A stretch of 64,000 nt of DNA, from assembly GCF_006345805.1 (NCBI RefSeq), contig NC_043025.1, positions 1,860,001-1,924,000 of the forward strand, in the 5' to 3' direction. The stretch comes from Octopus sinensis. Its lineage: Eukaryota. Under the pieces are notes generated by a model. That model was not told where the DNA came from and made no database searches. It was given only the letters and a program-made list of their open reading frames with translations. Both the position numbers and the translations under genes were made by a program. Positions 132-53,075 of the stretch are shown here, piece after piece. Each line of letters begins with the position of its first letter. Positions within the stretch are counted from its first letter, which is position 1.

Positions 132-203
132 ATTTCAACTATGCTGCGAAGGAATAAGAAAGCGCCATCTTCATATTTTTCTATTAGGTTGTTTTGCAAA
201 TAT
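132..203 (-). CDS. LRR protein, 72-nt LRR exon 6 (YLQNNLIEKYEDGAFLFLRSIVE); gene continues off the left edge
   Basis: Acceptor tttgtctctttttcAG, donor GTAAGA, 72 nt, phase 2/2, LRR consensus retained. Confidence 0.88.
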
Positions 204-551
204 CTGAAAAAGAGACAAATATTACACACTTTAAAATAAGTAAAAATAAATAAATCTGTTTACTCCTGTTTAGTACTAAATTGCGTTTTAGTCAACACTA
301 ACAGGGTAAATGCTGATATTACACACTACAATTGTTTGTTTCTCTTCATAGTTCTGTGGGAAGTGTTGTTTGAACAAGAATAAGTTCCTTCAATCTAATT
401 TAATTATCCTAAGAGAAAATCTGATAACAAAACAGCAACAGATGGAAGGGAATAAAATACAAAAATAACAAAATAACAAGGAGACTTTCTTATGTGCACA
501 ATATGGGTTTTAGTTAACATTCTCATCTATGGTAGAAATATCATTCTCCAT

Positions 552-706
552 ATAGGCATGGTTCTGTGGCAAGAAAATTACTTCTCACATCCATGGATTC
601 TTTAGTCCAACTGTGTGGCACCTTGGACAAATAACATTTACTATAACCTTGGGTCAACTAAGCGTTGTGAGTAAATTTGCTGCAGGAAACTGTGTGGATT
701 CCCTTC

Positions 707-753
<47 letters not shown>

Positions 754-965
754 TGTGTTTGTCTTTGTGTTTATCCCCACCAACGCTTGATGACCAATAT
801 TGGTTTGTTTACGTCCCCCGTAACATAGTGGTTCCGCAAAAGTTACCCGACTGATTAAGTGCCAGGTTTTAAAAATTCAGTACTAAGGACGATGTGTTCG
901 AGGAAACGCTTGGAGGTAGTACTCCAGCATGGCCGCATTGTGATAACTGAAACAAGGAATAGTAA
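552..965 (+). mobile_element. tRNA-derived SINE, family 1 (degenerate)
   Basis: Head ...ctgtggcaag...gtggcaccttgg...actataaccttgggtc, central (TA)n, tail ctccagcatggccgc...actgaaacaag; same layout as many copies later in the window. Confidence 0.8.
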
Positions 966-1279
966 AAGTATATACTCCAGTAGCAGTGTAATGATAAAAA
1001 TGGTTTTCAAAACAATAAACTATTAATTATTGCAATAACATTGACCATCTTCAGACCAGTGCATAACTTTCAGAATCCTATTCAAAGTACACAAAACAAT
1101 GCTCACCTTTTGGTAGAAGATATATACTGGGTACCTATAAATTGACTATAAAAGAAGAACAAGAACAAGAAGAAGGAAAAGAAGACGAAACAACAAAGAG
1201 AAGACGAAGGAAGAAGAAGAAGAAGAACAAGAAGAAGAGGAAAAGAAAGAAGACTAAGAAGAAAAAGGAGAAGAAGAAA

Positions 1280-1310
<31 letters not shown>

Positions 1311-1485
1311 AAGAAGAAGAAGGAGGAGGAGGAGGAGGAGGAGGAGATGTAGAAGAACAAGTAAAACAAGAAGAACAAGAATAAGAAGATAGTGCACTCT
1401 GAAAGTTTATACGTTTCTGAGAGAAAATATATCAGTATCAAAGGAAACATTCAGAAAATAGTATTAAGAAACTGAACGAACTAAC

Positions 1486-1557
1486 AAGTAGTTTAAATTC
1501 GAAAGCCTCGTGAAGGTCCCTTCTTTGATGGTTGAAATTTTGTTGTTCCGCAGATCT
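1486..1557 (-). CDS. LRR protein, 72-nt LRR exon 5 (DLRNNKISTIKEGTFTRLSNLNYL)
   Basis: Acceptor ctttactgctatAG, donor GTTAGT, 72 nt, phase 2/2. Confidence 0.9.
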
Positions 1558-2240
1558 CTATAGCAGTAAAGAAAGAGTAAAATAGATTATATAGAAAATA
1601 TTTGTGATACGACATCAAAAACTGTGGCTTTAGAATTAAATGAAGAAAGAGAAGAGCGTAACGAAAGAAGAAGAAGAAGAAGAAGAAGAAGAAGAAGAAG
1701 AAGAGAAGAAGAAGAAGAAGAAGAAGAAGAGAAGGAGTTGAATGACAATATCGAAACACGAAAGAGAATATTGAAATAAGAAATGAAGAGAGACAAATTA
1801 TAAAATAAAGGAATAATATAGTCACACTTTACACTTATAACTACACTTATTTATGAACATACTCACATACTTCAGCTAAAAATATTTAATGCAAACATGG
1901 AAACTCACAAACGTTACCATTTCTAATACAAATTCATATAAAAGTCATTGGAATTTGAGGATCAAAATTGATTTAGGATGACCTGAAGTGAAACAAAGCA
2001 ACTGCAATAAGGGAACATTAAATTTGTCCTATCATTTCACTTTCTCTCTCTCTTTCTCTCTCTTTCTCTCATTGTGTCTCGCTCTCTTACTCCCTGTTTG
2101 TATCTTCCAAACTCCTGTTCGGTCCCCAAATTTGAATTGATTTGCTTATTGCAGTCTGAACGTTCATACATTTGTGAGTTTATATATCAGCATCATATAT
2201 TACTTTCAGAAATTATTATCAAGAAACTGAACGAACTTAC

Positions 2241-2312
2241 AATTTCGTTAAATTCGAAAGCCCATTGAAGGAACCATCTTTGATGGTCGAAATGTCGTTG
2301 CCGTCAAGATCT
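2241..2312 (-). CDS. LRR protein, 72-nt LRR exon 4 (DLDGNDISTIKDGSFNGLSNLTKL)
   Basis: Acceptor ctttacttctgtAG, donor GTAAGT, 72 nt, phase 2/2. Confidence 0.92.
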
Positions 2313-4061
2313 CTACAGAAGTAAAGAAAGAGTAAAATAGATTAGATGGAAAATATTAGTGATAAAACATCAAACAATATGGCTTTAGAATGAAAGGGAA
2401 AAAAGGAAGACATATAACGTAGAAGAAAAAGAAGAAGAAGAAGAAGAAGAAGAAAAAGAACAAGAACAAGAAGAACAAGAACAAGGACAAGAACAAGAAC
2501 AAGAACAACAACAACAACTAGAACAAGAAGAAGAAGAAGAAGAAGAAGAAGAAGAAGAAGAAAAAGGAGAAGAAGAAGAAGAAGTAGACGAAATAAGAGG
2601 AGGAAGAAGGGAGGAAGGGAGGAGAAAGGGAGGGGGAAAAGGAGAATAAAATGAAGGAGGAGGAGGAGGGCGAAGAGGCGAAAGAGGATAATGCGGGGAG
2701 AAGGAGTAAAAGGAGGGTGAAGGAGGGGAGGCGAGGAGGAGAGAGAAGGAGGGAAGAGAGGCGGGGCAGAATGGGCAGGAGGAGGAGGCGAATGAGAATA
2801 GGAGAAACAAGTAAAAGAGAAAGAAAAAGAAGGAGGAAATTGACAAAGCAGAATGTACAGGAGAAAGTTTCTGAAAAAATAGAAGAAGAAGAAGAAGAAG
2901 AAGAAGAAGAAGAAGAAGAAGAAGAAGAAGAAGAAGAAGAAGAGGAAAAGAAAGAAGACTAAGAAGAAAAAGAAGAAGAAGAAAAGAAGAAGAAGAAGAA
3001 GAAGAAGAAGAAGAAGAAGAAGAAGAAGAAGAAGAAGAAGAAGAAGAAGAAGAAGAGAAGAAGACACATTGAAAATCTTGGTATTCAAGAAGGCGAAACA
3101 GAAAATGTAGTCAAAGAAATAACAGGAGATATTTCAGGGACAGGGAACAAACGTTTGAGGGAGAGAACATGGCTGAAAAATGAGGGAATATACGGACTCA
3201 GAAATCAACATATTTGAATGCACTCATACACATGCTTATATTCATAATATGAACGACGTAAGGTGATACGCACACTCACATTCACACATATTCTCACTCA
3301 CCTGTGTGGAAATATGGCGAGAGAGATTATTAATCTCATATCGCTTAATTGACAGAAGAAAATTATATTAGAAAAGCCCCTCTAACTAGAAATATATCAG
3401 CAGTTAAATTGTATCAGGCCAAATATTCCTGCTTAAATGTGCAGTAAGGATTTCAGGTTTACAGAGAGAATGTATGTGACGACATTATTCGTATATATTT
3501 ATTTTCCGCTTCCACTTCAGTTGGTTTATCACTTAAATAAAGTGATGTGAATGAAAAAGTCGAAGTTGAATGATAATATCGAAACACGAAAAAGATTGAA
3601 ATAAGAAATGAAGGATACAAATTATATAATAAAGAATAATATATTCACATTGCACACGGAACTACACTTATATATGAACATACACACATACTTCTGCTAA
3701 AAATATTTGATGCAAACATGTAAACTCACAAATGTTACCATTTTTAATACAAATTCAAGTAAAATCATTGAAATTAGGGGCTCAAAAATGAGTTATGGTG
3801 ACACGAATTGAAACAAAGCAACAGCAATAAAGGAACATTAAAATTGTCCAATTATTTCACATTCTCTCTCAATTTCTCCCTCTTTCTCTCACTATGTTTC
3901 GCTCTCTTACTCCCTCTTTGTATCTTCCAAACTCCTGTTCGGTCCCCAAATTTGAATTGATTTTGTTTAGTGCAGTCTGAAAGATTATTGGTTAATGAGT
4001 GTATATATCAGCATCAAATATTACTTTCGGAATATAGTATCAAGAAACTGAACGAACTTAC

Positions 4062-4133
4062 AATGACGTTAAATCGGAAAGCCTCGTGAATACATCTTCT
4101 TCGATGGTTGAAATTTTGTTGTTCCACAGAATT
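4062..4133 (-). CDS. LRR protein, 72-nt LRR exon 3 (ILWNNKISTIEEDVFTRLSDLTSL)
   Basis: Acceptor ...ctgctatAG, donor GTAAGT, 72 nt, phase 2/2, no stops. Confidence 0.92.
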
Positions 4134-4854
4134 CTATAGCAGTAATGAAAGAATAAAAATGATTATATGAAAAATAATTGTGAAAAAACATCAAACAAGG
4201 GGGTTCAGAATGAAAGGAAGAAAAATGAAGACAGATAACGACGACGAAGAAGGAGGAGGAGGAAAGGAGGAAGAGGAGGAAGAGGAGGGGAGGAGGAAAG
4301 GAGGAGGGGTGGAGTATAGGAGAAGCGGTTGAGGAGGAAGGAGGAGGAGAAGGAGGAGGAAGAGTAGGAGGAAGAGTAGGAGGAAGAAGAGGAGGAAAGG
4401 AGGGGAGGAGGGAGGAGGAAGGGGAGGAGAAGCATAAGAAAAATGAAGAAGAAAAAGGAGGAAAAAAAGAAGAAGAAGAAGAAGAAGAAGAAGAAATAAA
4501 ACAAGAGGAAATTATTTCGGCGGAACTGTGGATAAATAACCACACGTTACCACAAGAATCAAGAGAACAATGTGAAACGAAACAGTAGCTAAAACATAGG
4601 TATTATAATAACACTACAGACACACTCATACATATGTGAACATACACGTTTTCAGGAATAAAATTTTGATGCAGACGATTATCAACTGCCAGACATTGTC
4701 ATGTTCAGACACAATCAAATAAATATAACACGAATATGAAAAGTGATTATAACTTCAAGTAATAGGGAGTGAGAATAAATAGAAATCAGGGAATATTTAA
4801 TTTAAAGACACATTATATTCCTCATGTATAAACGACAACATTGAAAGGACTTAC

Positions 4855-4926
4855 AATTCCTGTAAGTTCTGAAGGCCTTGAAACATCTCTTTTTCAATCC
4901 TCGAAATTTTATTGTCCTTTAGAGAT
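4855..4926 (-). CDS. LRR protein, 72-nt LRR exon 2 (SLKDNKISRIEKEMFQGLQNLQEL)
   Basis: Acceptor gttttctgcttcAG, donor GTAAGT, 72 nt, phase 2/2, typical LxxLxLxxNxI repeat. Confidence 0.92.
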
Positions 4927-5588
4927 CTGAAGCAGAAAACAATATTGCTTAGTTTGACTTAATATGGAATTGCAATAAAATATTGAATATTTTTCTTTAT
5001 GTATAGGAACAATATTACAGGAAAATACAAGAAGAAGAAGAAGAAGAAGAAGAAGAAGAAGAAGAAGAAGAAGAAGAAGAAGAAGAAGAAGAAGAAGAAG
5101 AAGAAGAAGAAGAAGAAGAAGAAGAAGAAGAAGAAGAATGGAATTGCAATAAAATAATGGAATAATATAGTCACATCTCACACAGAATTACACTTAGATA
5201 TGGACATACTCACATACTTCTGCTAAACATATTTGATGCAAACATGTAAACACACAAACGTTACCATTTCTAATACAAATTCATATAGAAATCATTGAAA
5301 TTTGAGGCTCGAATATGAGTTATGGTGACGCGAATTGAAACAAAGCAACTGTAATAAAGGAACATTAAATTTGTCGTATTATTTTAATTTCTCTCTCAAT
5401 TTCTCCCTCTTTCTCTGTTTGTGTCTCGCTCACTTACTCCCTCTTTGTATCTTCCTAAATCGTGTTCGGTCCCCAAATTTGAATTGTTCTTGTATAGTGC
5501 AGTCTGAAAAATTATTGGGCAATGTGTGTATATATCAGCGTCAAATATTACTTTCGGAATATAGTATCAAGAAACTGAACGAACTTAC

Positions 5589-5660
5589 AATTGTTTTAAA
5601 TTCTTAAGCCCCGTGAATACACCTTCTTGGATGGTTGCAATATTGTTATCCTGCAGATCT
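5589..5660 (-). CDS. LRR protein, 72-nt LRR exon 1 (DLQDNNIATIQEGVFTGLKNLKQL)
   Basis: Acceptor ctttactgctatAG, donor GTAAGT, exactly 72 nt, phase 2/2. Joins the previous exon to give ...VEYL-DLQDNNI, a canonical first LRR. Confidence 0.92.
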
Positions 5661-6164
5661 CTATAGCAGTAAAGAAAGAATAAAAAGATTAGACGGAAAA
5701 TATTTGTGATACGACATCAAAAACTGTGGCTTTAGAATGAAAGGAAGAAAAAGAAGAGAGCAGGAGATGAGGAGTGGAGGAGGAGAGGAGGAGAAGGAGG
5801 ACGAGGAGGAGAAGAAGAAGAAGAGAAGAAGAAGAAGAAGAAGAAGAAGAAGAGAAGAAGAAGAAGAAGAAGAAGAAGAAGAAGAGAAGAAGAAGAAGAA
5901 GAAGAAGACGAAGAATGTCTTAATGTGGCAGCCGTTTCGTGTTTATTTCTTACTTGACTTGCACAACCTCGAGTATCCGCTTCGCCTATCTACGTATCAA
6001 CACACATATCCACACAAATACACGCACTTATACGCACATACATACGTATGCTCTCAGAAATATACACACATATGTATATCTACCTCTGGGTGCGGGAATG
6101 TGTGCGAACCTCGTCTCTGTAGTGATGTCCTTTTATCTGTCGATATAGTTTATTATCGAATCTA

Positions 6165-6800
6165 AAGGTGTTGTCTTCTAGTTCCAGGTGTGTCTTTGGA
6201 AATGCGTTTTGAAGCGTTCGTCCATCTGTCCGTTATGCTTTTCTACCAAGTGTTTGATTGCTTCCCGGCCCAAAGTCTGATGTATTAGTATAAAGATTAG
6301 TCAAAGATTGTAGATATAATACGTTCTGGAATGTGTTTGAGGAAATCCATATCGTCTCGGGTATAGCTGGGCATTAATGGGCATAACGGTTTGAGGAGTA
6401 TATCCAAAAGATGGCTCAGTTGTTGTGTTGGGGCTCAAGGTCCAGCAACTGTTGGTCTCAATTTGATGTCAGTAGGTCTTAGTATTTTTATCTGCTGGTT
6501 CCTGCATTTTGGAGCATTCGTAGATCTTGGGTGATCCATAGGAATTACTCTCTTTCATTACAGAGCTGCATAAATAATCTTTCTCTTTATCTGTGAACGA
6601 ACATTGGTATTCATTTATCAGACTTTTGAGTATATTCATTATTACTTTTTCCGGGTATCTTGGTTTTTCCTAGTAGCAGGTCTGTTTCCAATATTTTATC
6701 TTTATAGTAGTCGTGGTCCGTGACTGCTATCACCCTTCCCTAATCGGTTTCTTTTAGGATGGTTGAATTGTCATTCTTCAGTTTGTAAGGCTTCCTTTTC
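6165..6800 (-). mobile_element. Penelope-like element reverse transcriptase fragment (disabled) in LRR-gene intron 1
   Basis: Minus strand reads IKLRPTVAGP*APTQQLSHLLDILLKPLCPLMPSYTRDDMDFLKHIP...(T)NLYTN...LGREAIKHL, matching PLE RT motifs RP-I-V, PSYIRD and FDVxxLYTNI; contains stops and frameshifts. Confidence 0.75.
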
Positions 6801-7629
6801 TTCTTCACGAAGGTTCTGTTCGATTTACTGGGAGTTTATTATATAAGATATAAAACAGATCTAAGTCACTGCGTAAAGTATGAATGAAAAACACACATGC
6901 ATGTAAAATATGAGAAAATAATGGATGTTCAAAATATTTGTGATTTGAATTAGATTTACAAAGCCTTCGTATTCAGTATTCAGTGGAAGATATTTTTATC
7001 ATCTCAGAAGTCAGCTTTATTTATAAATATCTTGTTTCTGTCCAATGAGCATTTCATTCGCTATTACACTTTGTTGTCAAAAGTAATTTACCTTTGCAAA
7101 ATAAACTCCTTTCCTTTGCTTAGTTGATGCATAAAAGTTCTTCACAAAAATAAATAAACCCCCAAAACTTCAAGACTGAAATAATAGACTAGGAAGGAAA
7201 GCATAACAGAAATGGAAAGGGATTTATTAATAGAACTGGTGATGGTAGAGTGGGGAAACCCTTATTTAATTTTGAGTTATGTGCTACAAAGGAGAACAAC
7301 CTTACATGGTGATTTAACTGGTTAAGAGTGTTATTTAAAAAAGGGATGAGACAACATACATTGCCTTAGTTTTTCGGTCTTTTTTTAGTCCTTACTCTTG
7401 CTGTATTAAATCTCAGTTTGTTCCCATTATTAACCACATATGCTAAATCCTTCATCTCCTAAATAGCATCCCTGCTCATCATTCCTGTAAACAGCTCAAA
7501 CGGAATATTAATGATATCTGTCTCACAAGTATTGGAGATCTTGCAGGAGTTATAAAACTTGTCTGATTCTTTCTCCAAAATCGATAAAATAAAAAGTGTG
7601 GAATTTTAACTCAGGTCACAGACAACTGG

Positions 7630-7830
7630 ACAATATACTGCAAGGTGTCTTATTCGAGGTCCTCATAGTTGCATTTGTTCATTGAACTGTTATGGTTCTT
7701 TATTGATCTCGGAAATAAATGACGCAAGGTTGACCTTGGCGGGATTTGATGTCAGATTGCCGTGTGTCAGAACGCAATGTATTCTACTAGACGGTCAACA
7801 GATTTGTGCCAATCCTCGCTTAAGTTGTGA
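7630..7830 (-). mobile_element. SINE family 2, degenerate
   Basis: Reverse complement resembles ggcggcgagctggcagaa...aattccgccgaggtcgactttgcctttcat copies at 29059 and 47410. Confidence 0.6.
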
Positions 7831-8489
7831 ACGATGAGAATATCTAACTTATTAAACAGAACTTCAACTTTACTATTCAACATCTTGAGTTATACCAAAT
7901 TTAGGAATTCCATTATTGAAACTTTTCTCTTTATTTTACATTGGAATTTCTCATTTGGTCAAAACGTTCCAAATTTTTTGAGAAATAGATCTGATCGAAT
8001 GAATTGATCCACTTTAGTATTAGAATATGTTATTAAAACAGAAAGTTTAAGGTGATTAATGCAATGATGCAAGCCAATTAACTGGAAGTAATCACCTGGA
8101 AGAGCAATGTGTTGCAACAGAGTATTTGTTATGATTTATGTATCAAATAATTACTCTTTTTTATTCTATTCCATTTCTTGAGACGTTAAATTTTAATAAT
8201 GCACTTAAAAATTACGTAAGTTTTCAGGTGAACGGGGATGCATCAAACAGCCGAAACTTCAATTAAGCTTGCATAATTTTGTAATAAGTTTTATTGTGTT
8301 CATGACAGGGTAAATTTTACTGATGACATTCTATCAAAAATAAATTCCTCATAATTTGTTCAAACAGCACTATTTTGATTTCTTCACTTTTTTAAGAATT
8401 TGGCAATTTAAGCAGATCTCGTCATTATCTGCAGTTTAATCCATCTGTATCATTTTTAATTATAAAAATAATCATTTCTTCTATAGGAA

Positions 8490-8682
8490 CAAACCTGAAA
8501 TTTGGGGAAAGGGACAAGTCCTTTACGTTGATCTCAGAGATAAATTGCTATTTATTTTACCGATTCCAAAAGAATGAAAAGCAAAGTCAACCTCGAGAGA
8601 ATTTAAAATCGAAACGTAAAGACGAACGAAATACCGCTCAACATTTTGTCTGGCGTGCACAACGATTCTGATAGCTCGCTGC
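8490..8682 (-). mobile_element. SINE family 2
   Basis: Reverse complement gcagcgagctatcagaatcgttgtgcacgccagac...gaggttgactttgcttttcattc matches the family-2 head and body. Confidence 0.75.
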
Positions 8683-9140
8683 ATATTCTATTATAAAACT
8701 AACACAAACAATAATTAACAATTATTCTGTAACAAGATCAAATGATATTATATTATATTACTGTAACTATAAGCAACAATTCAACTAATTAATGATATAA
8801 TATAACTATGTGGAATACACGTTTTCTTAGCACTAAAGTTTTTATACTGTCCGTTCATTGAATATACCGTAAGATTTGATAAGTTCAGACAAATAACATC
8901 AAAGTCAGATACTAGTCAGATCCAATCACTGTGTATGAGATGTTATATATTATAAATTCAATATGGTAGGAAACAGTTTATTTGACTTCACAGCAGGTAA
9001 CATATCGATTTGTTTTACTCTAACATAAGATTGTGCTTAAAGCTGTGAGATAAACAGCATAAGCGATTAGCTGAGAACATAATCAATGAAAATTTAAAAT
9101 ATTGGAAGTGGAAAATACGTAGAAAGTGTCAAATACTTAC

Positions 9141-9331
9141 AAATATTCAACATTCGTCGGAATTGGTTGTGGAATTGATGCTAGATTGCGATTGTCACAA
9201 TTTATTTTTGTTGTAAGTGAATTGCAAGTACATATCTTGCATATATCTGAATCAGCTTGAGCCTCCAAAAACAATATCGTGCACAGTATCAACACAAGAG
9301 ACCGTCTATATGATACTATGTGGCGAAACAT
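9141..9331 (-). CDS. LRR protein, first coding exon: signal peptide + LRRNT cysteine cap
   Basis: Translates MFRHIVSYRRSLVLILCTILFLEAQADSDICKICTCNSLTTKINCDNRNLASIPQPIPTNVEY(L): hydrophobic leader then CxxCxC...C-L..IP..IP cap. Ends TT|GTAAGT (phase 2). An acceptor ttttcttcttttacAG at 9352-9353 puts the exon start at 9351, 20 nt before the ATG. Confidence 0.9.
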
Positions 9332-14683: not shown

Positions 14684-17600
14684 CAAGTGTCTGTAACCTG
14701 TGGCAAACGTGTCATGTGTAGCACGCGAAACAATTCACAATGGCATGCACACCACTTGGCAAAAACTAAAAGTAAATTTTTATTCATAACTAAATCTGAG
14801 GAAGCGACATCATAATAATTAAATTACATATCTTTTTTACGATCCATCTATTCTAGCCTAAACTATCTGAAGTTAGCTGTATTTGGTAGTATTACATTTC
14901 CTTAAAAATATAGTACTACTGAACACAATTTTGATACGAAATAATGAATGTTAGCACAATTAATTTGTTTGTAAGCTGGTGCCGAAAGCATTCATATGTA
15001 CCCTATCACTGAAGCCGGGAGCTAGAGGTGCGAACGCTTATTGTTTCGAACTCGGCTATATATTTAGCAGTGCAGATTATAATATGTTGAACTTGGTTAA
15101 CCACTTTACAGCAGCCAGTCTAAATAAAGACACTCTTTAAAATGGACTCCTACATTGCGGGTCGTCTATAAGTAGACGCTTTTAAAATTATTCTTTCATT
15201 TTGGAAAGAAAAAGCGGTAACGAGTAGGATTTTGAAAAGGAAATAAACATGAAAAGCCAAAATTAGTTATTTTTTTTTCTTAGGTTATAGTTATTTTCTT
15301 CGTGAGTCAAGTTGTCTGATCTTTTGAGTTTTTTTTTTTGTTTATTCATATCATCTATTTTAATCTAATTATTTTATTATTACAAAAATTAATTCATTAA
15401 ATTAATTCCGTTCTTTTTTACTATTTATTTTATTCTAATTATCTTTATTTAAATATTTTTATTTTCATTTTTAGAACCTGATTTAAGGGTTATACACCAG
15501 TCATATCAATTATCAATATATAGTGCCCCAAATTGAATAACAAAGGACCAAAATTTGACGTTCGTTCATTTCAAGATTTCTGGAGCACTGAGTATGGATT
15601 TGTATAACAAAATCATCGAGCTGTGTGTGCGTTCTGCTGTGAATTTGTCGTATGTCGTACATCAAGTGTACAAAGACACTATCAAACTAGACACCAGACT
15701 ATATTTAAAAACGCTGATGATAAAAGGTAAGTCATAAAACGGGCTAATTCTAGTTACAAAAAAAGCACTTCTATTTTTGTTCAAATGCTTGGAACCAACA
15801 ATGAAGCCAAATAATGTAGTTACACAATTGCTCAATGTATAGCTGAGAAAGGTAAACCTTTTACAGCCGGAGAATTTATCAAAAAAACTTTTCGAGAATT
15901 GCTAAAATTTTGTTCAGTGATTAAGCAAACGCTGAACAAATACTGTCTCGAATTCAAGAAATACCAACTTCTGCATGATCAGTTGAGAGACGTATAACTG
16001 ATATCGATGAAAACATAACAATAAAACAAAAAGTTGGATTACAAAATGATGCTGCATTCAGCGACCCCTTTCGATGAAAGTACTGACGTGAATGACATGG
16101 CGCACCTAGCAATTGTTGCAAGATATTGTGACAATGATCGTATTTACGAAGAATCATGTTGTTTGATTATTCCTCTTACCAATACATCAGACATTCTGAC
16201 TGCATTTCTAAATTATTTCGAAAATCAAGCCATTAATACAAATAAAATATTTTGTATTACTACTGGTGGTGCACGTGCAATGGTTGGAAAGGAAAAAAGA
16301 TTTATTAAGCGTCTTGAAAATCACATTTCACGCAGTGTAATGTGTTTTAATTGCATTGTACATCGGGAAAATTTAGTTGCAAAACTTTCGTCACAAAGCT
16401 TCAGTTCTGTCGTGGAGACTGTTGTTAAAATAGTTAACTTCATGGTTTCTCGCTCTTCACTGGCTCACAGACAATTTAAGTCTCTTCTGCAAGAACTGGA
16501 CAGCGAATATGCAGACTTCCCACTTCACAGTAAAGTCCTGCAGCGTAGACTCGGTTAAAATTCCCCTCTCCCATATATTTATATACGTGCATTCGAACGT
16601 AGCAGGGAACAGCTAGCCTTTTGCCGCTATTTCGATCCTGTTGTGTCCACTACTCTGATTAGTTGGTATTGGCGCAATTTGTAGGGCCGAATTGCCGCGT
16701 ATAACCTGTCGGAGTCCCTAAATACGATCACCTGCGACAGCCTGTTCACTACCCCGTTTTGGCCTACTTCTCCTTATAAAAAATCAGCTTTTTCTCCTTT
16801 CGAGGTCTTTTGGTTCCAGACCTTTTAAGGACTAGCCTCTGACCACAAAGACACAGCCAGTTCCAGAGACTTACCAACTTTGTCCAACAGCATTCCAACA
16901 ACCTCCATCTTCGTCGCTATCACCATGTCCTTAACGTCTTCAACATCATCTCTCTACGTACACAGCTCTGCAAGCGATGCACCCAGGTTCCAACACTTCA
17001 CTGTTCATGAATTACTTCATCATGGGTCAACAACAAATATACAACCAGTATGAATTCCTGTACAAGTTACCCAGGCAGCAGCATCACAGCCACGACATCA
17101 CGTTCAACATATACCTCTAATTGTCTCCTACATCTATGAACCCATACGCATACATTCTGTTCTCATGACGGCATGTCTATCGTTCAGTATACATGACACA
17201 TCTGTTAACATATCAATAAATCTTCTTTTAATCATTCTACGCGGTTGTCTCCTTTTTCCATCAGGCAAATAGATGGTACTATCAATTTTCTCTTTTGTGA
17301 GGGCTGTGTGGTGTGGTACTAAAGAACCATTCTTGTCACCTCGCATCGCACGGTCCTTACAGTCCGTTGATTTTGTCGGGTAATGTTTTGAACAGATTTG
17401 TATCATGCTTAGAAGAAATCAAAATATTTCTTGAAAGGAAAGAGATGCCAGAATTGAACAACGAAGACGAGTTATTTAAACTGATACTTCTAACTGACAG
17501 TCACTTGAATGATTAAAATTTGCAAACAGTACTTGATCTTTTTGAATACTGGGAAGGATTTTTGTTAAAATCAGACTTTTTTTGGCGTGATACACTTAGC

Positions 17601-30026: not shown

Positions 30027-33000
30027 TATGTTTGACTTTTGCTTTATATTTGTACAAGTTGGCTCCAAGTCTCACCCAGAGACCTCAAGAGACAACAGGG
30101 TTGGAAGTTCATGTTGTTGTTATGCCTAGTGTGCCATATATTTGGGGGTGGGGATGTTGTACTAATGAATGTCTAAAAAGAAAAAAAAAGTTTTTTTTTT
30201 TTTTTTTAAAAAAACCGAAAAATGTTTGTTTTAAACCTTGAGATTACATAGAGAGTATTTTGCGTAGATATGAGCAGTTCCCATGAGCACTATCTTTTGA
30301 ACTTCTGCCATTTTTGGGTTTCCTGGTATCTGAGTTAGGTAGCTATCAACCCCTTTTGCTATCATTCCCAGGGCACCTATGACAACAGGTATTGTTTTAG
30401 TCTTCAGCTTCCACATTTTGCTGATTTCTATTTCAAGATATTTATATTTGCTCAGTTTTTGGTAGGTCTTGACAGATACGTTTATATCGATTGGGACAGT
30501 CATATCAATGAGGAGGCATGTTCTTTGTTTGAAGTTTTTCAATATGATGTCTGGCCTATTTGCATCTATCTTCCTGTCAGTTTGAATGGTGAAGTTCCAC
30601 AGGAGTGAGATGTGGTCATTTTCAAGCACTGGGTGTGGTTTGTGTTCCCACCAGTTTTTTTCATGGGGCAAATCCAGGTTTTTACAGATTACCCAGTGAA
30701 TATATTGTGCAGCTCTATCGTGCCTGTTGAGATACTCTGTAGGCGCTAGAAGACTGCACTTGGAGACCACATGGTCAATGGTTTCATTTTGTTGCTTGCA
30801 TACACGACACGTTGGACTGCTTCTGATCTTTAATATGTTGGCCTGGTAGTTTTCTTCTTGTTGGTAGGCATTGATCTTGAGCTGCTATGATAAACCCCTC
30901 TGTTTCAGATTTTAAGCCAGAGGTCATTAGCCATTGATGGGTCAGGGCTTTGTCGATATCTGCATTATTCGCTCTCTTTGGGTATTTGCCATAGAGAGGT
31001 TTTTCTTGCCATTTATTATTCAGAATATCTAAGGCCGCAGTTTTTGGCACGGGTTTTCATGCGCCTAGCTTTTTCTGTGCTTGTTTCTTGTATATCTATC
31101 TCTAATTCCGAAATTGGTTGTATTCGGATTCACTTAGATATTCCTTTGCCTGTTTTGTGACTGAGTATGATGCTTTCTTGTTTTCATGTTTTGAGACAGG
31201 TTTTAGCATCCAGTCCTCAGAGTTTTTCAGGTAGGTGTCTAGGCCAATTGTAGCAATCTTCATTGTTATTGCCAGTTGCAAAAGACCACGGCCTCCCTCT
31301 TTTCTTGGCAGATAGAGTCGTTCTGTATCTGCCTTAGGGTGGCGCATTCTATGCATAGTCAACAGTTTCCTTATTTTTCTGTCGAGCTGACATATTTCAG
31401 TAATTGACCAGTTAACAATATTGAAACTGTAAGTCACGACTGGTATAGCTAATGCATTGATTGCTTCGATCCTGTTTCTTGCATTCAGCTCTGTCTTGAG
31501 TATTGCTCTTACTCTTCGATAGCATTCTCTCCTGATCCTTTCCTTCATCTCTGAATGCCTTATTCCGTTCCCTTCAATTATCCCTAGGTACTTGTAGCTC
31601 TCCGCTGGGTCTAGTTATTTTATGACATTCTGTTGGTCAAGGTTAACGTTAGATGTTTCTGTCATTTTTCCTTTGATAAAGGTAGCCTTTGCACATTTAT
31701 CGAGGCCGAATTGCATTCTGATGTCGTCACTGAATTGTTTGACTATCGCTAGTAAGCCCTTGAGTTGTTGATCATTTTTTGCAAAAAGCTTTAAATCATC
31801 CATGTAAACGAGATGATTTATATTTTTATCAACATTTTATACCCGTACTGCGCGTCATTGAGCAGCTTTGAGAGAGGTATTAAGGATAAACAAAAGAGGA
31901 GTGGTGACAGTGAGTCACCCTGGAAAATGCCACACGAAATTTTTACATCACCAGCATTTAGGGATTCACTGTCACTGTTCAGAGTTAGTGTGGTTCTCCA
32001 TGATCTCATACTTACAGTCAAGAAGTTTCGCAGAGTTGGTGCTATCTTATACATTTCAAGGCATTTCCTAATCCAGCTATGTGGTAGGCTATCAAAAGCC
32101 TTTTAATAGTCTATCCAGGCTATTGATAAGTTTTTGTGTCGTTTGTGACAATCTTCTTATTGATGAGTAGTTGGTCTTTACAGCCGTAGGATCCACGTTT
32201 ACATCCTTTCTGTTCATTAGGGAATATGCTGCTGTCTGTTAAAAAACTATAGGTATATTCCGTCAGGACAGATGTTAGTGTTTTGTACATAGTTGTTAAG
32301 CAGGTTATGGGTCTATAGTTTTTTGGTTCATTTGTTTCTTCACTTTTTGGAAGCAGGAATGTTAACCCATTAACTAGCCAAGGAGGCATCCTACTAGGGT
32401 GTTGCAAAACATCATTGTACAGTTCTGTTAGCAGTTCATGGCTCTCTGGGAAGGCTTCAGCCAGAAGTTAGGAATTTTATCCTTTCCTGGAGACTTCCAT
32501 TTGCTTGACCTCCTGAGAGCAGATCTTATATCTTCTATTACCTACCGACACCCTCCCACTTTTGCTCTTCTAAGGGGTCTAGTTCTGTAGATATTCTGTC
32601 CAATCCAGGGGGCCTTTTCGTTGTGTGTTTTTTCTTCTGCCCAGATTTTTTCCAAAATCTCTGCACTTCTTCTTTTGATGGTACAGACCCTGCAGTAAAC
32701 GCTGTTTTTCCTATCTTCCTGTAAAATTCTTGGTGTTATTTTTGAACATGTTGTTGTCCTTGAAAATCTAACACGCTTTTCATACCTCGCTATGCGGGCA
32801 GCTTTGGCAGATACCTTTTGTTTGATGGTTTCTATGGTGGCATCAATATCAAGTATAGTTTTCATATTGTATTTTTTCAGTAATTTTTGGGTTTTTGTAG
32901 GTTTCGTAATCTTGTGAGCCTTAAGGTTTTTCAAATATTCAATGTCAGATCTAAATATTTTAATTTGTTGTTGCAGACGCTCTTGGCAAGAAGGCTTTTG

Positions 33001-34092
33001 TGGGACTGTTGCCGTTTTCTAATCTTTACACCACATAGGATCGTTGAGATTTTCGCGGATGCATAGTATAGGTGGTTGAGGTTTGTGATATCAACATCAT
33101 TAACTGAAATTATATCCTTAAGTGCAAGCCGGATTTTACCAATTATTTTCATGTTTTGGTTAGAGTTGCGGATTTTAGGAAGTATCATCACGCTCATCCA
33201 TGCTGGTTTCTTTAATTTTCAGCCATTCAATCATGATTTGATTTTTTAGCTCATGTAGTTCTGTTGGGTCAATATTTGTGTGACTTTCTTTATCTATTTG
33301 ATGCTCATCTGTCTTAGTGTTTATGATTGGTTCAGGGCGTATTCACTTTGCCTATCACTTATACTAACTCTTTCAAACCTCTCTTCGTTTTGTTATCCGC
33401 CCTGGGCTGGTCTATAATCATTTCCTCTGTATTATCTTCTCTAGCTGCAGCTTCGTTCATTTTATCCGATATTGCTTGTCTAACCTGATCAATCTCTACT
33501 TCAGTCAGTAATTTCTTTTTTATAATGTTTCTTCTAACGTGGCAAGCTTGTTACTGTCTATGTAGGGTCTTACTTCAGGGTGTTTCTGTCTCCAGTTTAA
33601 GTATGCTTGTACAGTGCTAGACTTATCTGTGGGGAAATATATGGCATGGTAGAAGGCCTCAAGAACTTCTTTATTATCTTCCCTAGACCATTTTTCCTTC
33701 TTTTTCTTTTGATTATTTGGTGATGAGCATGGATGGCCATCTGTTGGAATATTCCGGTTGTGGGGTTCGTCCAGCTCCTGTGTGTTGGGAAGATTTGATC
33801 CAGTAACTGATTTTTCAATCAGGATTTGGTTCAATTTTCGGGTACGTGGTCTTTTGTAATCCGCGCAATGACCAATGCGGTTTATTGTTTGATTTGTTGA
33901 CCTTGAAGCATGACGAGCATCCATTCTTATATTAGGAGATGGATCTGTCAGTTTAGGGTTCACTACATGTAAGCATTGCTCATAGCGCCGCTTCTTAAGA
34001 CTAGCAGATCTATATTCGTCTGTATTTTTTTTGTTGATAGTTTTATCTCCGGACATTTTTTTTTCCTCCTTTCCTCCTCTTCCTTTCTTCAA
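30027..34092 (-). mobile_element. R4/Dong-like RLE non-LTR retrotransposon, family A, near full length, frameshifted
   Basis: N-terminal KWSREDNKEVL..W...SNKLA; RT motifs NYRPITCL, GIFQGDSLSP, YMDDLK; zinc knuckle C..C...H...C..L....YLNRHD; RPD..K endonuclease; 3'UTR ends in (AAT)n. Confidence 0.93.
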
Positions 34093-34964
34093 GGCTTACT
34101 GTGTCTGTATTAGTTCGAAATAATGAGAATAAAATACGGAGAAGGAAACGAAAAGAAAGGGAAAAAGACGGGATCTGTCAGTATTATTGTCATTACTATC
34201 ATCTTCACCACCATCACCATCATCAGCACCACATCACCATCATCACATCATCATCTTCAATGACATTGTTTTGTGTAGCCACAGTCACCATCAACACTCC
34301 ATTGTGTTGGAGAATGGGTGGTTAAAGAATTCATGTTCTTTGGGTCTATAAATAGCCACGGTAGATGGTGGAGACAAAGGACGTTAATGGTCAGTAAAAG
34401 GTCAAATTTATTTATTTTTTTTTCCTTTCTTTCTTCTTCTTTCTTCACCACATGCATATGTATATGTTATATATGTATATTCACTCACACATATTATCTG
34501 ATGTTTTCGTCGAAGATTTTTTTTTTCTTTTTTTAAATAACTTTCTGAGTTCAATGTTATGTATATAATTTTAAATTTCTGAATTCAGTTGTATGTATAT
34601 AGTAGTAGGTGCTTAATTCAATAACTTTTTATCGTGCATTTAATTGTATTGTAACAATAAAAGGTAATTTAAAAGGCAATTTTACACATTCTTATAGTCA
34701 TGAGAGACGACTAAATGTAAATGTTCACACAGAATTGGAGATATTTATGTTTCTAATTGTTCTTGTTAGGTGTACGTTTGTATGAGCTGTAGATATGTAA
34801 GTTTTTTTTTTTTTACTTATTTTGAGGGTAATTCAAATTACTTACAGTAAACAGTAGATCTTCCAGTTTTCTACAGTTGTCCTGCTGGGTTCGCTGTTGC
34901 CAGTTCAGAGCATCGTAAAAATACGTCCATCCTCTGTCACGTCCAGCCGCCTATTCTTATTCTT

Positions 34965-35038
<74 letters not shown>

Positions 35039-35329
35039 CATTATTATTATTTATCACTATTAAGGTGGAGAGCTGGCAGAATCGTTAGCACACCGGGCAA
35101 AATGCTTGGTAGTATTTCATCCATCATTAGTTTCTGAGTTCAAATTTCCACGAGGTCAACTTGGTATTTCATCATTTCGAGGTCTATAATTTAAATACCA
35201 GTTAAGTACTAGGGGCTATGTAATCGACTAACTCACCCCACCAAATATTTCAGGCCTTGTGCCTATAGTAGGAACGACTGTTATTTTTGTTGTTGTTATC
35301 GTTGTTATTATTATTTTTATTATATTATT

Positions 35330-35382
<53 letters not shown>

Positions 35383-35398
35383 TATTATTATTATTATT

Positions 35399-52100: not shown

Positions 52101-53075
52101 ATGTTTTTATAATTGGTGTTATTATTGCGTTTATTTTTATTCTTGGAGGTATGGTCGGTGGTCCATTTTGAGCTCTGTGGTTTTTAGTTCTTTGATTATT
52201 TTATTTTTTATATTATCATAATCATTAGGCTCCCCTTCGTTGTTTACATCGTATTTGTTGGGAATGTTGCGTTTGTCTTCGTGTTTTACAGTTTCAGTGT
52301 TTATATTATTGGGCATTGTTGTGTGGCTTCTATCTACATTTTCTTGGTGTATTTTTTCTTTTAAATGTTCTATTTCTATTTCTGATATTTTTTTGGCTTT
52401 GAGAATATATCTTCGTACGTTAGCTAATTTATTAGGGTTCATTGCTGTATCCAAGTCTATATCTCTATTATTTTCCTTCCATATTTTATATGTATGTGTT
52501 GTTGTATTTTCATTTTGTGGGTAGAGCATTGCTGTGAAGTATGCGTGTAAGATAGAAATGTATTCCTCACGTGTCCATTTACGTCTTTTGGGTTTAATAA
52601 TTGCGGGACATGAGGTACAACGTCCGGCCCATTATTTTGACGGTCGTCATTTTCGTAGGGTACCGGTCCGTTTATTTCTGTTGTCACATTATTTCGCACG
52701 TGTAGTTTTTCGTACATTTTTTGTTGCAGGTTTAATGTACGTACCGCTCGATTGTTATTCTTGGGTGAATAGTATCGGTGGCATTTAATTTCTTCGTAGT
52801 TCCTTTGTACATGGTGTTTGAGGTCGGGGATAATCGTGTCGTTCCACGCATGTTTACATGTGTTGTGTTAGAGGTGGAGATAATATCGAGTCAAAATAAT
52901 CCTTTCCTTCGTTTCGAAAATAGTAAAAATTCAATTCGTATTACTTACTCGGATATAGTCCAATTCTTTGTTAGTAAATCTTTGGCTCCATAGGGTGTCC
53001 TTGTTTTCGATGTTTGTGGATAGATTTCGGAGCTCTGTATTTCTTCTTACATCTAAAACGTCCCCGGTGTCTTCC
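49123..53075 (-). mobile_element. R4/Dong-like RLE retrotransposon family B, apparently full length (about 3.95 kb), both ends in (TAA)n
   Basis: ORF pieces 52137-52529 (LANVRRYIL), 51380-51835 (WKAPGHDKIPNFWLK), 50519-51163 (RT), 49488-50522 (CCHC, RPD), 49150-49458; 5' junction (aat)n-ggaagacacc, 3' junction actactg-(aat)n. Confidence 0.94.

What the first reader, a model, noticed from the sequence alone, without database searches (positions are those of the whole stretch)
4003..5660. Duplicated LRR exons differ far more than their flanking intron, with only amino-acid-changing codon differences
Manual count: exons 5589-5660 and 4062-4133 differ at 19 of 72 nt in 12 codons, all non-synonymous. 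The adjacent donor-side intron differs at about 1 of 60 nt (about 5 of 95 further out); the acceptor-side intron is more diverged. Exons 1486-1557 and 4062-4133 differ at about 15 nt with one clearly synonymous codon. Many changes fall on the exposed x positions of LxxLxLxxN (KQ/TS/TK/NY; QD/WN/DG/RN), while L, N, I, F framework residues are fixed. Inference: diversifying selection on a ligand-binding concave face, or intron homogenisation by gene conversion with exons escaping it.
Basis: partly seen in the sequence, partly recalled or inferred. Interest (0 to 1): 0.85.

Follow-up and report, generated by a model that had tools for sequence, protein, structure and literature searches.

The report
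Fast-evolving octopus LRR exon array
The region is part of an octopus gene for a secreted leucine-rich-repeat protein built from one-repeat exons; recombination keeps the introns of these exon units alike, while a few codons on the predicted binding face change unusually fast, a known evolutionary pattern seen here in a gene family for which I found no published description.

Summary
The counts are correct. Exons 5589-5660 (E) and 4062-4133 (C) differ at 19/72 nt in 12 codons, all amino-acid-changing. The donor-side intron differs at 1/58, 5/93 and 47/437 nt.

This pair is the extreme of 45 exon pairs. It is inflated because cassette E is a recombinant: its acceptor-side intron and exon follow one lineage, its donor-side intron follows cassette C, and the breakpoint lies at exon positions 69-71 (window 5590-5592, p about 1e-9).

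The gene is on the minus strand. Exon 1 (signal peptide plus LRRNT) is 9331-9141. Six 72-nt phase-2 LRR exons follow: E, D, C, B, A and F (132-203). The C-terminal exons lie outside the window. It belongs to an Octopus family seen in O. sinensis and O. vulgaris.

Exon divergence above intron divergence is family-wide:
- O. sinensis cassettes: pi 0.163 in exons against 0.04-0.07 in introns.
- Colinear pairs with O. vulgaris: 38/216 against 71/897, p = 6e-5.

Whole-exon dN/dS is about 0.7, and synonymous sites are also elevated. A site model still finds omega about 6.8 at LRR positions 3, 7 and 8, on the concave strand (LRT 20.3). Recombination is pervasive.

Best reading: concerted evolution of a modular array, with diversifying selection on concave-face codons. 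This is a new member of a known kind.

The parts
9141..9331 (-). Exon 1 coding part: signal peptide plus LRRNT cysteine cap (MFRHIVSYRRSLVLILCTILFLEAQADSDICKICTCNSLTTKINCDNRNLASIPQPIPTNVEYL). It ends with TT, which joins the first A of the next exon to make a Leu codon.
   Evidence: tblastn of P0001/P0005 gives 85-89% identity. The sequence shows the ATG at 9331 and GTAAGT starting at 9140. Pfam LRRNT E = 3.9e-4, below the gathering score.
5661..9140 (-). Intron 1, the single-copy part of the conserved 5' module.
   Evidence: p-distance of 6.0-6.6% to four O. sinensis paralogues, which differ from one another by 3.4-4.9%.
5589..5660 (-). LRR exon E (DLQDNNIATIQEGVFTGLKNLKQ), 72 nt, phase 2, flanked by AG and GT.
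5590..5592 (-). Recombination or conversion breakpoint at the 3' edge of exon E (exon positions 69-71). Upstream of it E follows the first-cassette lineage (L1_1, L4_1, W_A). Downstream it follows cassette C.
   Evidence: Triplet test: 30/34 informative sites match L1_1 on the left and 47/62 match W_C on the right, Fisher p = 1.3e-9 with 90 breakpoints tried.
5160..5588 (-). Donor-side intron block of cassette E, homologous to 3634-4061 and 1811-2240.
   Evidence: 89.5% identity to the C block. It is found only next to LRR exons and is not a dispersed repeat.
4855..4926 (-). LRR exon D, 'SR' type (SLKDNKISRIEKEMFQGLQNLQE).
4062..4133 (-). LRR exon C (ILWNNKISTIEEDVFTRLSDLTS).
3634..4061 (-). 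Donor-side intron block of cassette C.
2241..2312 (-).
   Evidence: Its closest homologue is O. vulgaris L005 15306-15377.
1811..2240 (-). Donor-side intron block of cassette B.
   Evidence: 86.3% identity to the C block.
1486..1557 (-). LRR exon A (DLRNNKISTIKEGTFTRLSNLNY).
132..203 (-). LRR exon F (YLQNNLIEKYEDGAFLFLRSIVE), the last LRR before the LRRCT exons, which lie beyond the window start.
   Evidence: tblastn with P0015. AG and GT sites are present, and it differs at 7/72 nt from the O. vulgaris homologue.
5810..5915 (.). (AAG)n microsatellite about 150 nt upstream of the exon E acceptor. Similar tracts lie at 5029-5138, 4251-4429, 2881-3064, 2421-2609, 1665-1734 and 1152-1389. Homology between cassettes ends at these tracts.
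   Evidence: Tandem Repeats Finder. The alignments degrade at about -62 to -108 from the exon.

Best explanation
Bases 132-9331 of the window (minus strand) hold most of an Octopus gene for a small extracellular LRR protein.

The layout is: signal peptide, LRRNT cap, then six 24-residue LRRs, each on its own 72-nt phase-2 exon. In homologues these are followed by an LRRCT cap and a Ly6/uPAR-like cysteine-rich domain.

Each exon sits in a cassette: a (CTT)n microsatellite, about 100 nt of intron, the exon, then about 430 nt of intron. These cassettes have multiplied in tandem and across several paralogous genes.

Unequal crossing-over and gene conversion between cassettes keep the introns and the framework codons (L, N, I, T, F) nearly identical. 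They also produce mosaic cassettes. Selection favours different residues at the solvent-facing positions of the LxxLxLxxN strand. It is strongest at positions 3, 7 and 8, and positions 2 and 5 are also variable. Those codons therefore stay different, or are replaced, and are saturated.

Conversion between cassettes then moves this standing exon variation around as short patches. That would raise both synonymous and non-synonymous exon divergence above the intron level.

The striking E-C contrast is a special case. E is a recombinant whose donor-side intron was recently copied from, or exchanged with, a C-like cassette. The breakpoint is at the exon-intron boundary.

Shown here: the gene structure, the exon-above-intron pattern in independent loci, the mosaicism, and site-specific omega above 1.

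Inferred: that the concave face binds a ligand, that the microsatellites promote exchange, and that patch conversion rather than new mutation supplies most exon changes.
For: Gene and family
- seven exons with AG/GT sites and open reading frames.
- the close homologues are Octopus sinensis and O. vulgaris proteins, plus one unnamed metaclust sequence (P0009) of unknown source.
- Pfam LRR_8 E = 2e-56.
- the model places its well-resolved strands at LRR positions 3-8. The closest structures are lamprey VLR, Nogo receptor, Slit2 D2 and GpIb-alpha.

Exon divergence above intron divergence is general
- six intact O. sinensis cassettes have pi 0.163 in the exon and 0.04-0.07 in the introns.
- three colinear window/O. 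vulgaris cassette pairs give 38/216 in exons and 71/897 in introns, p = 6e-5.
- in the SR cassettes, exon differences fall almost entirely at nt 2-12 and 51-69, and the core is nearly invariant.

Where the variability lies
- amino-acid diversity is highest at positions 7, 3, 8 and 5 (0.78-0.91). Eight framework codons never change the amino acid, and six of them are invariant at the nucleotide level.
- 10 of the 19 E-C differences lie in the 15 nt of the five concave codons (p = 4e-4). The rest of the exon, 9/57, is no different from intron, 55/490 (p = 0.28).

Selection
- M2a against M1a gives LRT 20.3 (p = 4e-5), omega2 = 6.8, with posterior at least 0.97 at positions 7, 8 and 3. Adding the SR exons raises the LRT to 39.7.
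- the null bootstrap reaches the observed LRT in 0/107 runs with no or four-block recombination, and in 1/53 runs with free recombination.

Recombination
- PHI-like test p < 0.0005 for the cassette and 0.008 within the exon. 124 of 190 informative exon site pairs are incompatible, and nearest neighbours change from segment to segment.
- the E breakpoint has p = 1.3e-9.
- two intron lineages exist, and the window type is also present in O. vulgaris.

Precedents for this mechanism
- PMC3924837: opsin exon 5 stays diverged between introns homogenised by conversion.
- PMC1805685: het-d/het-e WD repeats show concerted evolution with four positively selected surface positions.
Against: - Whole-exon dN/dS is below 1: mean about 0.67 and 0.71 in colinear pairs.
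- Synonymous divergence in exons (0.16-0.23) is itself 2-3 times the intron level. Selection on amino acids alone does not predict this. The patch-conversion explanation for it is inferred, not demonstrated.
- The data set is tiny: 23 codons and 10-14 repeats, which are paralogous units rather than orthologues.
- The codon model is my own implementation on a neighbour-joining tree. It ignores multi-nucleotide mutations, and 8 of 69 codons in the colinear pairs carry two or more changes.
- The species of the window is unknown. 'Colinear homologue' may therefore mean paralogue.
- All four O. sinensis contigs end inside the arrays, so assembly errors in such repeats cannot be excluded.
- No expression, ligand or functional data were available.
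Confidence: 0.6

Rival explanations
1. Pure positive selection after a recent duplication. E and C would be young whole-cassette duplicates, with intron divergence as the neutral clock. Their exons would have been driven apart only by adaptive amino-acid substitutions.
For: E-C shows 12 non-synonymous and 0 synonymous-only codon differences, with NG86 omega 2.05. The donor-side intron is only 1.7-10.8% diverged. The site model finds omega above 1.
Against: The acceptor-side intron of the same pair is as diverged as the exon (21-27%). E is a recombinant, with its breakpoint at the exon edge. Its exon is closer to O. sinensis first-cassette exons (12-14/72) than to C (19/72). Other pairs carry 1-5 synonymous-only codons, and the mean omega is below 1. 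Synonymous sites exceed the intron level.
Confidence: 0.12
2. Intron homogenisation only. The exons would be old, evolving under ordinary purifying or relaxed constraint. They would merely look fast because gene conversion has erased intron divergence. No diversity-favouring selection would be needed.
For: Recombination signals are pervasive. Whole-exon omega is below 1 and synonymous divergence is elevated. There is a published precedent for homogenised introns (PMC3924837).
Against: Most synonymous sites in framework codons are invariant across 10 cassettes from 5 loci, while codons 3-10 nt away are saturated at all three positions. An old, unhomogenised exon would be diverged throughout. 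Site-specific omega of about 6.8 is measured against the exon's own synonymous rate and survives null simulations with recombination. In the colinear pairs, the introns (7.9%) sit at about the level of single-copy intron 1 (about 6%), not below it.
Confidence: 0.15
3. Mutational explanation. Clustered multi-nucleotide mutations, CpG decay, or a locally error-prone process would hit the exons and mimic selection.
For: 8 of 69 codons in the colinear pairs carry two or more changes, against 1.2 expected at the intron rate. Synonymous polymorphisms sit next to hypervariable codons. Some changes are CpG transitions (TCG/TCA, GGG/AGG).
Against: A mutational process would not be expected to single out the same three to five codon positions of every repeat while sparing the framework codons between them. 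The dead exon in L002 offers no sign of exon-wide hypermutation, although this was not tested quantitatively.
Confidence: 0.08
4. Assembly artefact. The chimeric cassette and the uneven divergence would arise from misjoined or collapsed copies in a repetitive array rich in microsatellites.
For: All four O. sinensis contigs carrying family members end inside the arrays. Cassettes are 85-90% alike and are separated by long (AAG)n tracts.
Against: Exon divergence above intron divergence, and the same hypervariable positions, recur in three independent assemblies and in at least six loci. All seven window exons are intact with correct splice sites.
Confidence: 0.05

Closest known systems
Small capped extracellular LRR proteins (lamprey VLR, Slit D2, Nogo receptor, GpIb-alpha, LRRC4/NGL)
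   Same: Signal peptide, cysteine-rich LRRNT, a short run of 24-residue LxxLxLxxNxI repeats, and an LRRCT in the homologues. Foldseek's best matches are VLR 4k5u, NgR and Slit2 D2. Sequence matches go to IGFALS, LRRC15, LGR4, TLR3 and VLR-A. As in VLRs, variability concentrates on the concave strand.
   Different: The germline gene is complete and spliced from ordinary exons. There is no sign of somatic assembly. In homologues the C-terminus carries a Ly6/uPAR-like domain. In these searches the family was found in Octopus only, apart from one unnamed metaclust sequence (P0009) of unknown source.
Primate red/green opsin exon 5 and similar 'peaks of divergence' between duplicates under gene conversion (reviewed in PMC3924837)
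   Same: The introns of the paralogous units are kept similar by conversion, while an exon carrying selected differences stays diverged. The exon and the intron give different nearest relatives.
   Different: Here the units are tandem one-repeat exons inside one gene and across a gene family. Many codons are hypervariable, rather than two fixed tuning sites.
Podospora het-d/het-e WD40 repeat arrays (PMC1805685) and plant NLR/RLP LRR domains
   Same: Repeats undergo concerted evolution within and between family members. Repeat number varies. A few positions per repeat, on the interaction surface, are under positive diversifying selection.
   Different: This is an animal extracellular LRR with each repeat on its own exon. 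Exchange can therefore use intron homology, and there is no RIP. Function is unknown, and allorecognition or immunity is not shown.
Sea urchin Sp185/333 genes flanked by microsatellites (PMC3091723)
   Same: Microsatellites lie at the borders of the diversifying units and are proposed there to promote recombination.
   Different: The proteins are unrelated. Here the microsatellites are intronic and a role for them is only inferred.

Membership tests
Typical (24-residue) extracellular LRR proteins with N- and C-terminal caps | Tandem LxxLxLxxN(x)I/L repeats recognised by LRR profiles | tested here: met
   Pfam LRR_8 E = 2.3e-56, and LRR_4, LRR_1 and LRR_6 are above their cut-offs for the window protein. 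The six exons each encode one 24-residue repeat.
Typical (24-residue) extracellular LRR proteins with N- and C-terminal caps | Cysteine-rich LRRNT cap after a signal peptide | tested here: inconclusive
   Pfam LRRNT scores 20.4 bits, E = 3.9e-4, below the gathering score of 25.8. The four-cysteine pattern CKICTCNSLTTKINC and a hydrophobic N-terminus can be read directly from exon 1. No signal-peptide predictor was available.
Typical (24-residue) extracellular LRR proteins with N- and C-terminal caps | LRRCT cap | not testable with these tools
   The 3' exons lie beyond the window start. Homologues P0005 and P0015, and loci L005 and L006, carry a CGCHLP...C...C...C segment after the last LRR, but Pfam gave no LRRCT hit.
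Lamprey/hagfish variable lymphocyte receptors | Incomplete germline gene completed by somatic copying of flanking LRR cassettes | tested here: not met
   The germline locus has all LRR units as ordinary exons with AG/GT sites, in frame.
Lamprey/hagfish variable lymphocyte receptors | Hypervariable residues on the concave beta-strands of 24-residue LRRV modules | tested here: met
   The highest diversity is at LRR positions 7, 3, 8 and 5. The model places its well-resolved strands at positions 3-8. This is a resemblance in function only, not homology.
Duplicates with selection-maintained exon divergence under intron gene conversion (opsin type) | Introns more similar than exons between the paralogous units | tested here: met
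Duplicates with selection-maintained exon divergence under intron gene conversion (opsin type) | Statistical evidence for exchange, and different nearest relatives for exon and intron | tested here: met
   PHI-like tests. Triplet breakpoint p = 1.3e-9. The exon of E is nearest to L4_1 and L1_1, while its donor-side intron is nearest to W_C.
Repeat arrays with concerted evolution plus positively selected surface positions (het-d/e WD40, plant LRR) | A site class with omega above 1, confined to a few positions per repeat on the interaction surface | tested here: met
   M2a against M1a gives LRT 20.3, with positions 7, 8 and 3, backed by the null bootstrap. Caveats: a small alignment and my own implementation.
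Repeat arrays with concerted evolution plus positively selected surface positions (het-d/e WD40, plant LRR) | Variable repeat number among family members | tested here: inconclusive
   The window has 6 LRR exons, P0005 has about 6 and L005 has 3. Most O. sinensis models are cut off by contig ends.

The most novel reading that the evidence does not exclude
Octopuses may carry a lineage-specific, germline-diversified repertoire of VLR-like recognition proteins with the layout LRRNT, variable LRR cassettes, LRRCT and a Ly6-like domain. New specificities would be generated by microsatellite-bordered cassette exchange between many one-repeat exons. All LRR exons are 72 nt and in the same phase, so combinatorial exon skipping could add further variety. 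This would be a convergent, non-somatic counterpart of the jawless-vertebrate system.
Probability: 0.15. Interest if true: 0.7.

Novelty: new member of a known kind. Interest (0 to 1): 0.5.

Why it matters
The finding points to an Octopus family of small LRR proteins for which I found no published description. Its predicted binding face evolves fast, while the rest of each repeat, the introns included, is held nearly constant.

Families of this kind usually mark recognition of changing partners, such as pathogens, symbionts, gametes or self/non-self. Little of that sort is known in cephalopods.

The one-repeat-per-exon layout, with homologous introns and flanking microsatellites, also makes a tidy natural example of how intron homology can drive exon shuffling inside a repeat protein.

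For the scan, the case is a caution. An 'exon more diverged than intron' signal between two tandem units can be produced largely by a single recombination breakpoint. It should be checked against both flanks and against other family members before selection is invoked.

Tried and rejected
- **Transposable-element origin of the conserved intron block.** Rejected. The block occurs only next to LRR exons in the window and in L005.
- **A decayed SR-type exon between C and B.** None was found by tblastn.
- **'All 12 codon differences are non-synonymous' as evidence on its own.** Not significant by simulation, P = 0.06-0.09.
- **Maximum chi-square on E-C alone.** It placed the breakpoint at the poorly alignable microsatellite edge, around -61. 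The triplet test with a third sequence was needed.
- **The run of 51 identical sites at the E-C donor side.** By a rough hand estimate, not a tool result, a run this long is expected about 0.07 times by chance, so it is only borderline. I did not use it as evidence.
- **Loci for P0005 and P0006.** Not on record.
- **Identifying the species from a window retroelement ORF.** No record.
- **Pfam on the C-terminal cysteine-rich domain.** No Ly6/uPAR hit. The name rests on NCBI's label and on the CCxGxLCN motif.
- **First bootstrap run.** It timed out. I repeated it with M0-proportional branch lengths, under which the real LRT is 19.2.
- **Literature searches for an octopus LRR family of this kind.** Nothing specific was found.
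Full report
**What is there**

The window is AT-rich eukaryotic DNA, full of microsatellites.

On the minus strand, five 72-nt open exons with AG/GT borders encode one 24-residue leucine-rich repeat each:
- E 5589-5660
- D 4855-4926
- C 4062-4133
- B 2241-2312
- A 1486-1557

A sixth, F at 132-203, is the last repeat before the C-terminal cap. The introns are phase 2, and the split codon is always TT|A, which is Leu.

Exon 1 is at 9331-9141 and encodes a signal peptide and an LRRNT-like cysteine cluster.

Protein searches found close relatives in Octopus sinensis and O. vulgaris, plus one unnamed metaclust sequence (P0009). The sources call them 'LRRC4-like' or 'slit homolog-like'.

The full-length relative P0005 and the loci L005 and L006 show the rest of the architecture: an LRRCT-like segment and a cysteine-rich domain ending in CCxGxLCN. 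NCBI labels that domain Ly6/PLAUR-like, and Pfam does not detect it.

Pfam LRR_8 matches the window protein at E = 2e-56. A single-sequence AlphaFold model of P0005 has pLDDT 75-90 in most of the repeat region and places its well-resolved strands on LRR positions 3-8. Its best structural matches are lamprey VLRs, Nogo receptor, Slit2 D2 and GpIb-alpha.

I found no paper describing this octopus family.

**The observation**

- E against C: 19/72 nt, in 12 codons, none synonymous-only.
- Donor-side intron: 1/58, 5/93 and 47/437.
- Acceptor-side intron: 21-27/99.
- A against C: 15/72, with one synonymous-only codon.

Exon against all aligned intron gives Fisher p = 0.004. The conserved intron block is not a dispersed repeat.

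**Why the E-C pair looks so extreme**

Nearest neighbours change along the cassette.
- The acceptor-side intron of E is closest to first-cassette introns of the O. sinensis genes and to A (7-8% different).
- Its exon is closest to O. sinensis first-cassette exons (12-14/72).
- Its donor-side intron is closest to C.

I ran a triplet test with L1_1 and C as parents. 30 of 34 informative sites match L1_1 up to exon position 69. From position 71 onward, 47 of 62 match C. This gives p = 1.3e-9 with 90 breakpoints tried, and the same result is obtained with L4_1 or A as the first parent.

E is therefore a recombinant with its breakpoint at window 5590-5592. E and C share a donor-side intron by exchange, not because the whole cassettes are young. 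Consistently, the exon is no more diverged than the acceptor-side intron of the pair (p = 1.0).

E-C is also the most extreme of the 45 exon pairs. Elsewhere there are 1-5 synonymous-only codons per pair, and the totals are 351 non-synonymous against 109 synonymous-only codon differences. Zero synonymous-only codons among 19 random hits has probability 0.06-0.09.

**The pattern is nevertheless real and general**

- Among six intact cassettes from four O. sinensis loci, nucleotide diversity is 0.163 in the exon and 0.04-0.07 in the flanking introns.
- In the SR-type cassettes, exon differences fall almost entirely at nt 2-12 and 51-69, and the core is nearly invariant.
- The cleanest comparison uses three colinear cassette pairs between the window gene and the O. 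vulgaris locus L005 (D, B and F). Both flanks are conserved in these pairs. The exons differ at 38/216 and the introns at 71/897, p = 6e-5.

Single-copy intron 1 differs by about 6% from the O. sinensis genes. The introns in that comparison are therefore at, not below, the local background level.

**Selection or homogenisation?**

Whole-exon dN/dS is not above 1. The mean is about 0.67. In the colinear pairs pS = 0.23 and pN = 0.17, and both are significantly above the intron value of 0.079.

The variation is, however, very unevenly placed. Amino-acid diversity is 0.78-0.91 at LRR positions 7, 3, 8 and 5, which are x positions of LxxLxLxxN. Eight framework codons never change the amino acid across ten cassettes from five loci, and six of them are also invariant at synonymous sites.

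For E-C, 10 of the 19 differences lie in the 15 nt of the five concave codons. The remaining 9/57 are no different from intron.

I wrote a codon site model (M1a/M2a, F3x4 frequencies, neighbour-joining tree) and applied it to the ten intact ST-type exons.
- LRT 20.3, p = 4e-5.
- Omega2 = 6.8 for 13% of sites.
- Posterior at least 0.97 at positions 7, 8 and 3.
- With the four SR exons added, the LRT rises to 39.7.

In simulations under M1a, the observed LRT (19.2 in the faster variant used) was reached as follows:
- 0 of 53 runs without recombination
- 0 of 54 runs with four recombination blocks
- 1 of 53 runs with every codon on its own tree

Recombination itself is pervasive. The PHI-like test gives p < 0.0005 for the cassette and 0.008 within the exon, and 124 of 190 informative exon site pairs are incompatible.

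**Synthesis**

Exchange between cassettes homogenises the introns and framework codons, and it creates chimeras such as E. Selection keeps or renews differences at the concave-face codons.

The synonymous excess in the exons, and the excess of codons with two or more changes (8 of 69), have a likely common cause. Conversion between cassettes probably imports short patches of pre-existing exon variation. Such events are visible only where cassettes differ, and they differ in the exons. This last step is inferred.

Long (AAG)n tracts sit upstream of every LRR exon, and cassette homology ends there. They may promote the exchange, as proposed for sea urchin Sp185/333 (PMC3091723), but this was not tested.

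**Comparison with what is known**

The mechanism has clear precedents.
- Opsin exon 5 stays diverged between converted introns (PMC3924837).
- The het-d/het-e WD40 arrays of Podospora show concerted evolution of repeats together with four positively selected surface positions per repeat (PMC1805685).
- Plant LRR resistance genes show the same concentration of selection on the x positions. This last point rests on my own knowledge.

The protein resembles VLRs in size, caps and the location of its variability. It is not a VLR, because the germline gene is complete and conventionally spliced.

**Limits**

- The alignment is tiny, and it is made of paralogous repeats rather than orthologues.
- The codon model is home-made and ignores multi-nucleotide mutation.
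- The source species is unknown, so 'colinear homologue' may mean paralogue.
- The O. sinensis contigs all end inside the arrays, so misassembly in such repeats is possible.
- I had no expression or functional data.

**Verdict**

The locus is a new member of a known kind of evolutionary system, in an apparently undescribed cephalopod gene family. It is moderately interesting.

Noticed in passing
window 132-203 (-): A sixth LRR exon (YLQNNLIEKYEDGAFLFLRSIVE) of a different subtype, the last repeat before the LRRCT. It differs at 7/72 nt from the O. vulgaris homologue, and its flanks are 93-94% identical.
   Followed up: yes
window 1152-1389, 1665-1734, 2421-2609, 2881-3064, 4251-4429, 5029-5138, 5810-5915: Each intron between LRR exons carries a long (AAG)n/(AGG)n tract upstream of the next exon, about 100-150 nt from its acceptor. 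Homology between cassettes ends at these tracts, so they may act as exchange points.
   Followed up: partly
window 5661 to about 18900, against L001-L004: The 5' module (several kb upstream, exon 1 and intron 1) is about 94% identical between the window and four O. sinensis paralogues. The LRR arrays downstream are only 78-85% identical. The switch in similarity occurs at exon E.
   Followed up: partly
L002 13724-13795; L004 15914-15985: Dead LRR exons in O. sinensis paralogues. In L002 the acceptor AG has become AA and there is an in-frame TAA. The L004 copy has a stop codon and an altered 3' end. This indicates birth and death of cassettes.
   Followed up: partly
L005 26650-33727; L006 10001-17568: Family members end in a cysteine-rich domain with a CCxGxLCN motif. 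NCBI labels it Ly6/PLAUR-like and Pfam does not detect it. An LRR plus Ly6-like architecture is unusual.
   Followed up: partly
window 9141-9331 (exon 1): Differences between paralogues in exon 1 cluster in the LRRNT loop (TTKINCDNRNLAS against TTRINCARRNLLS against KSNVDCAKRNLTS). The signal-peptide part is almost invariant.
   Followed up: no
window about 30200-37400 and 49400-52600; 16034-16558: Retroelement ORFs, some reverse-transcriptase-like, in two closely similar copies (for example 35807-36793 and 49488-50522). One ORF looks to me like a DNA-transposon (hAT-type) fragment, though no family search was run on it. The same elements occur in the O. vulgaris locus at 80-94% identity.
   Followed up: no
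L001-L004 (O. sinensis GCA_006345805.1 contigs): All four contigs that carry family members end inside the LRR array. The public gene models (108-136 aa) are therefore truncated, and the size of the family is probably underestimated.
   Followed up: no
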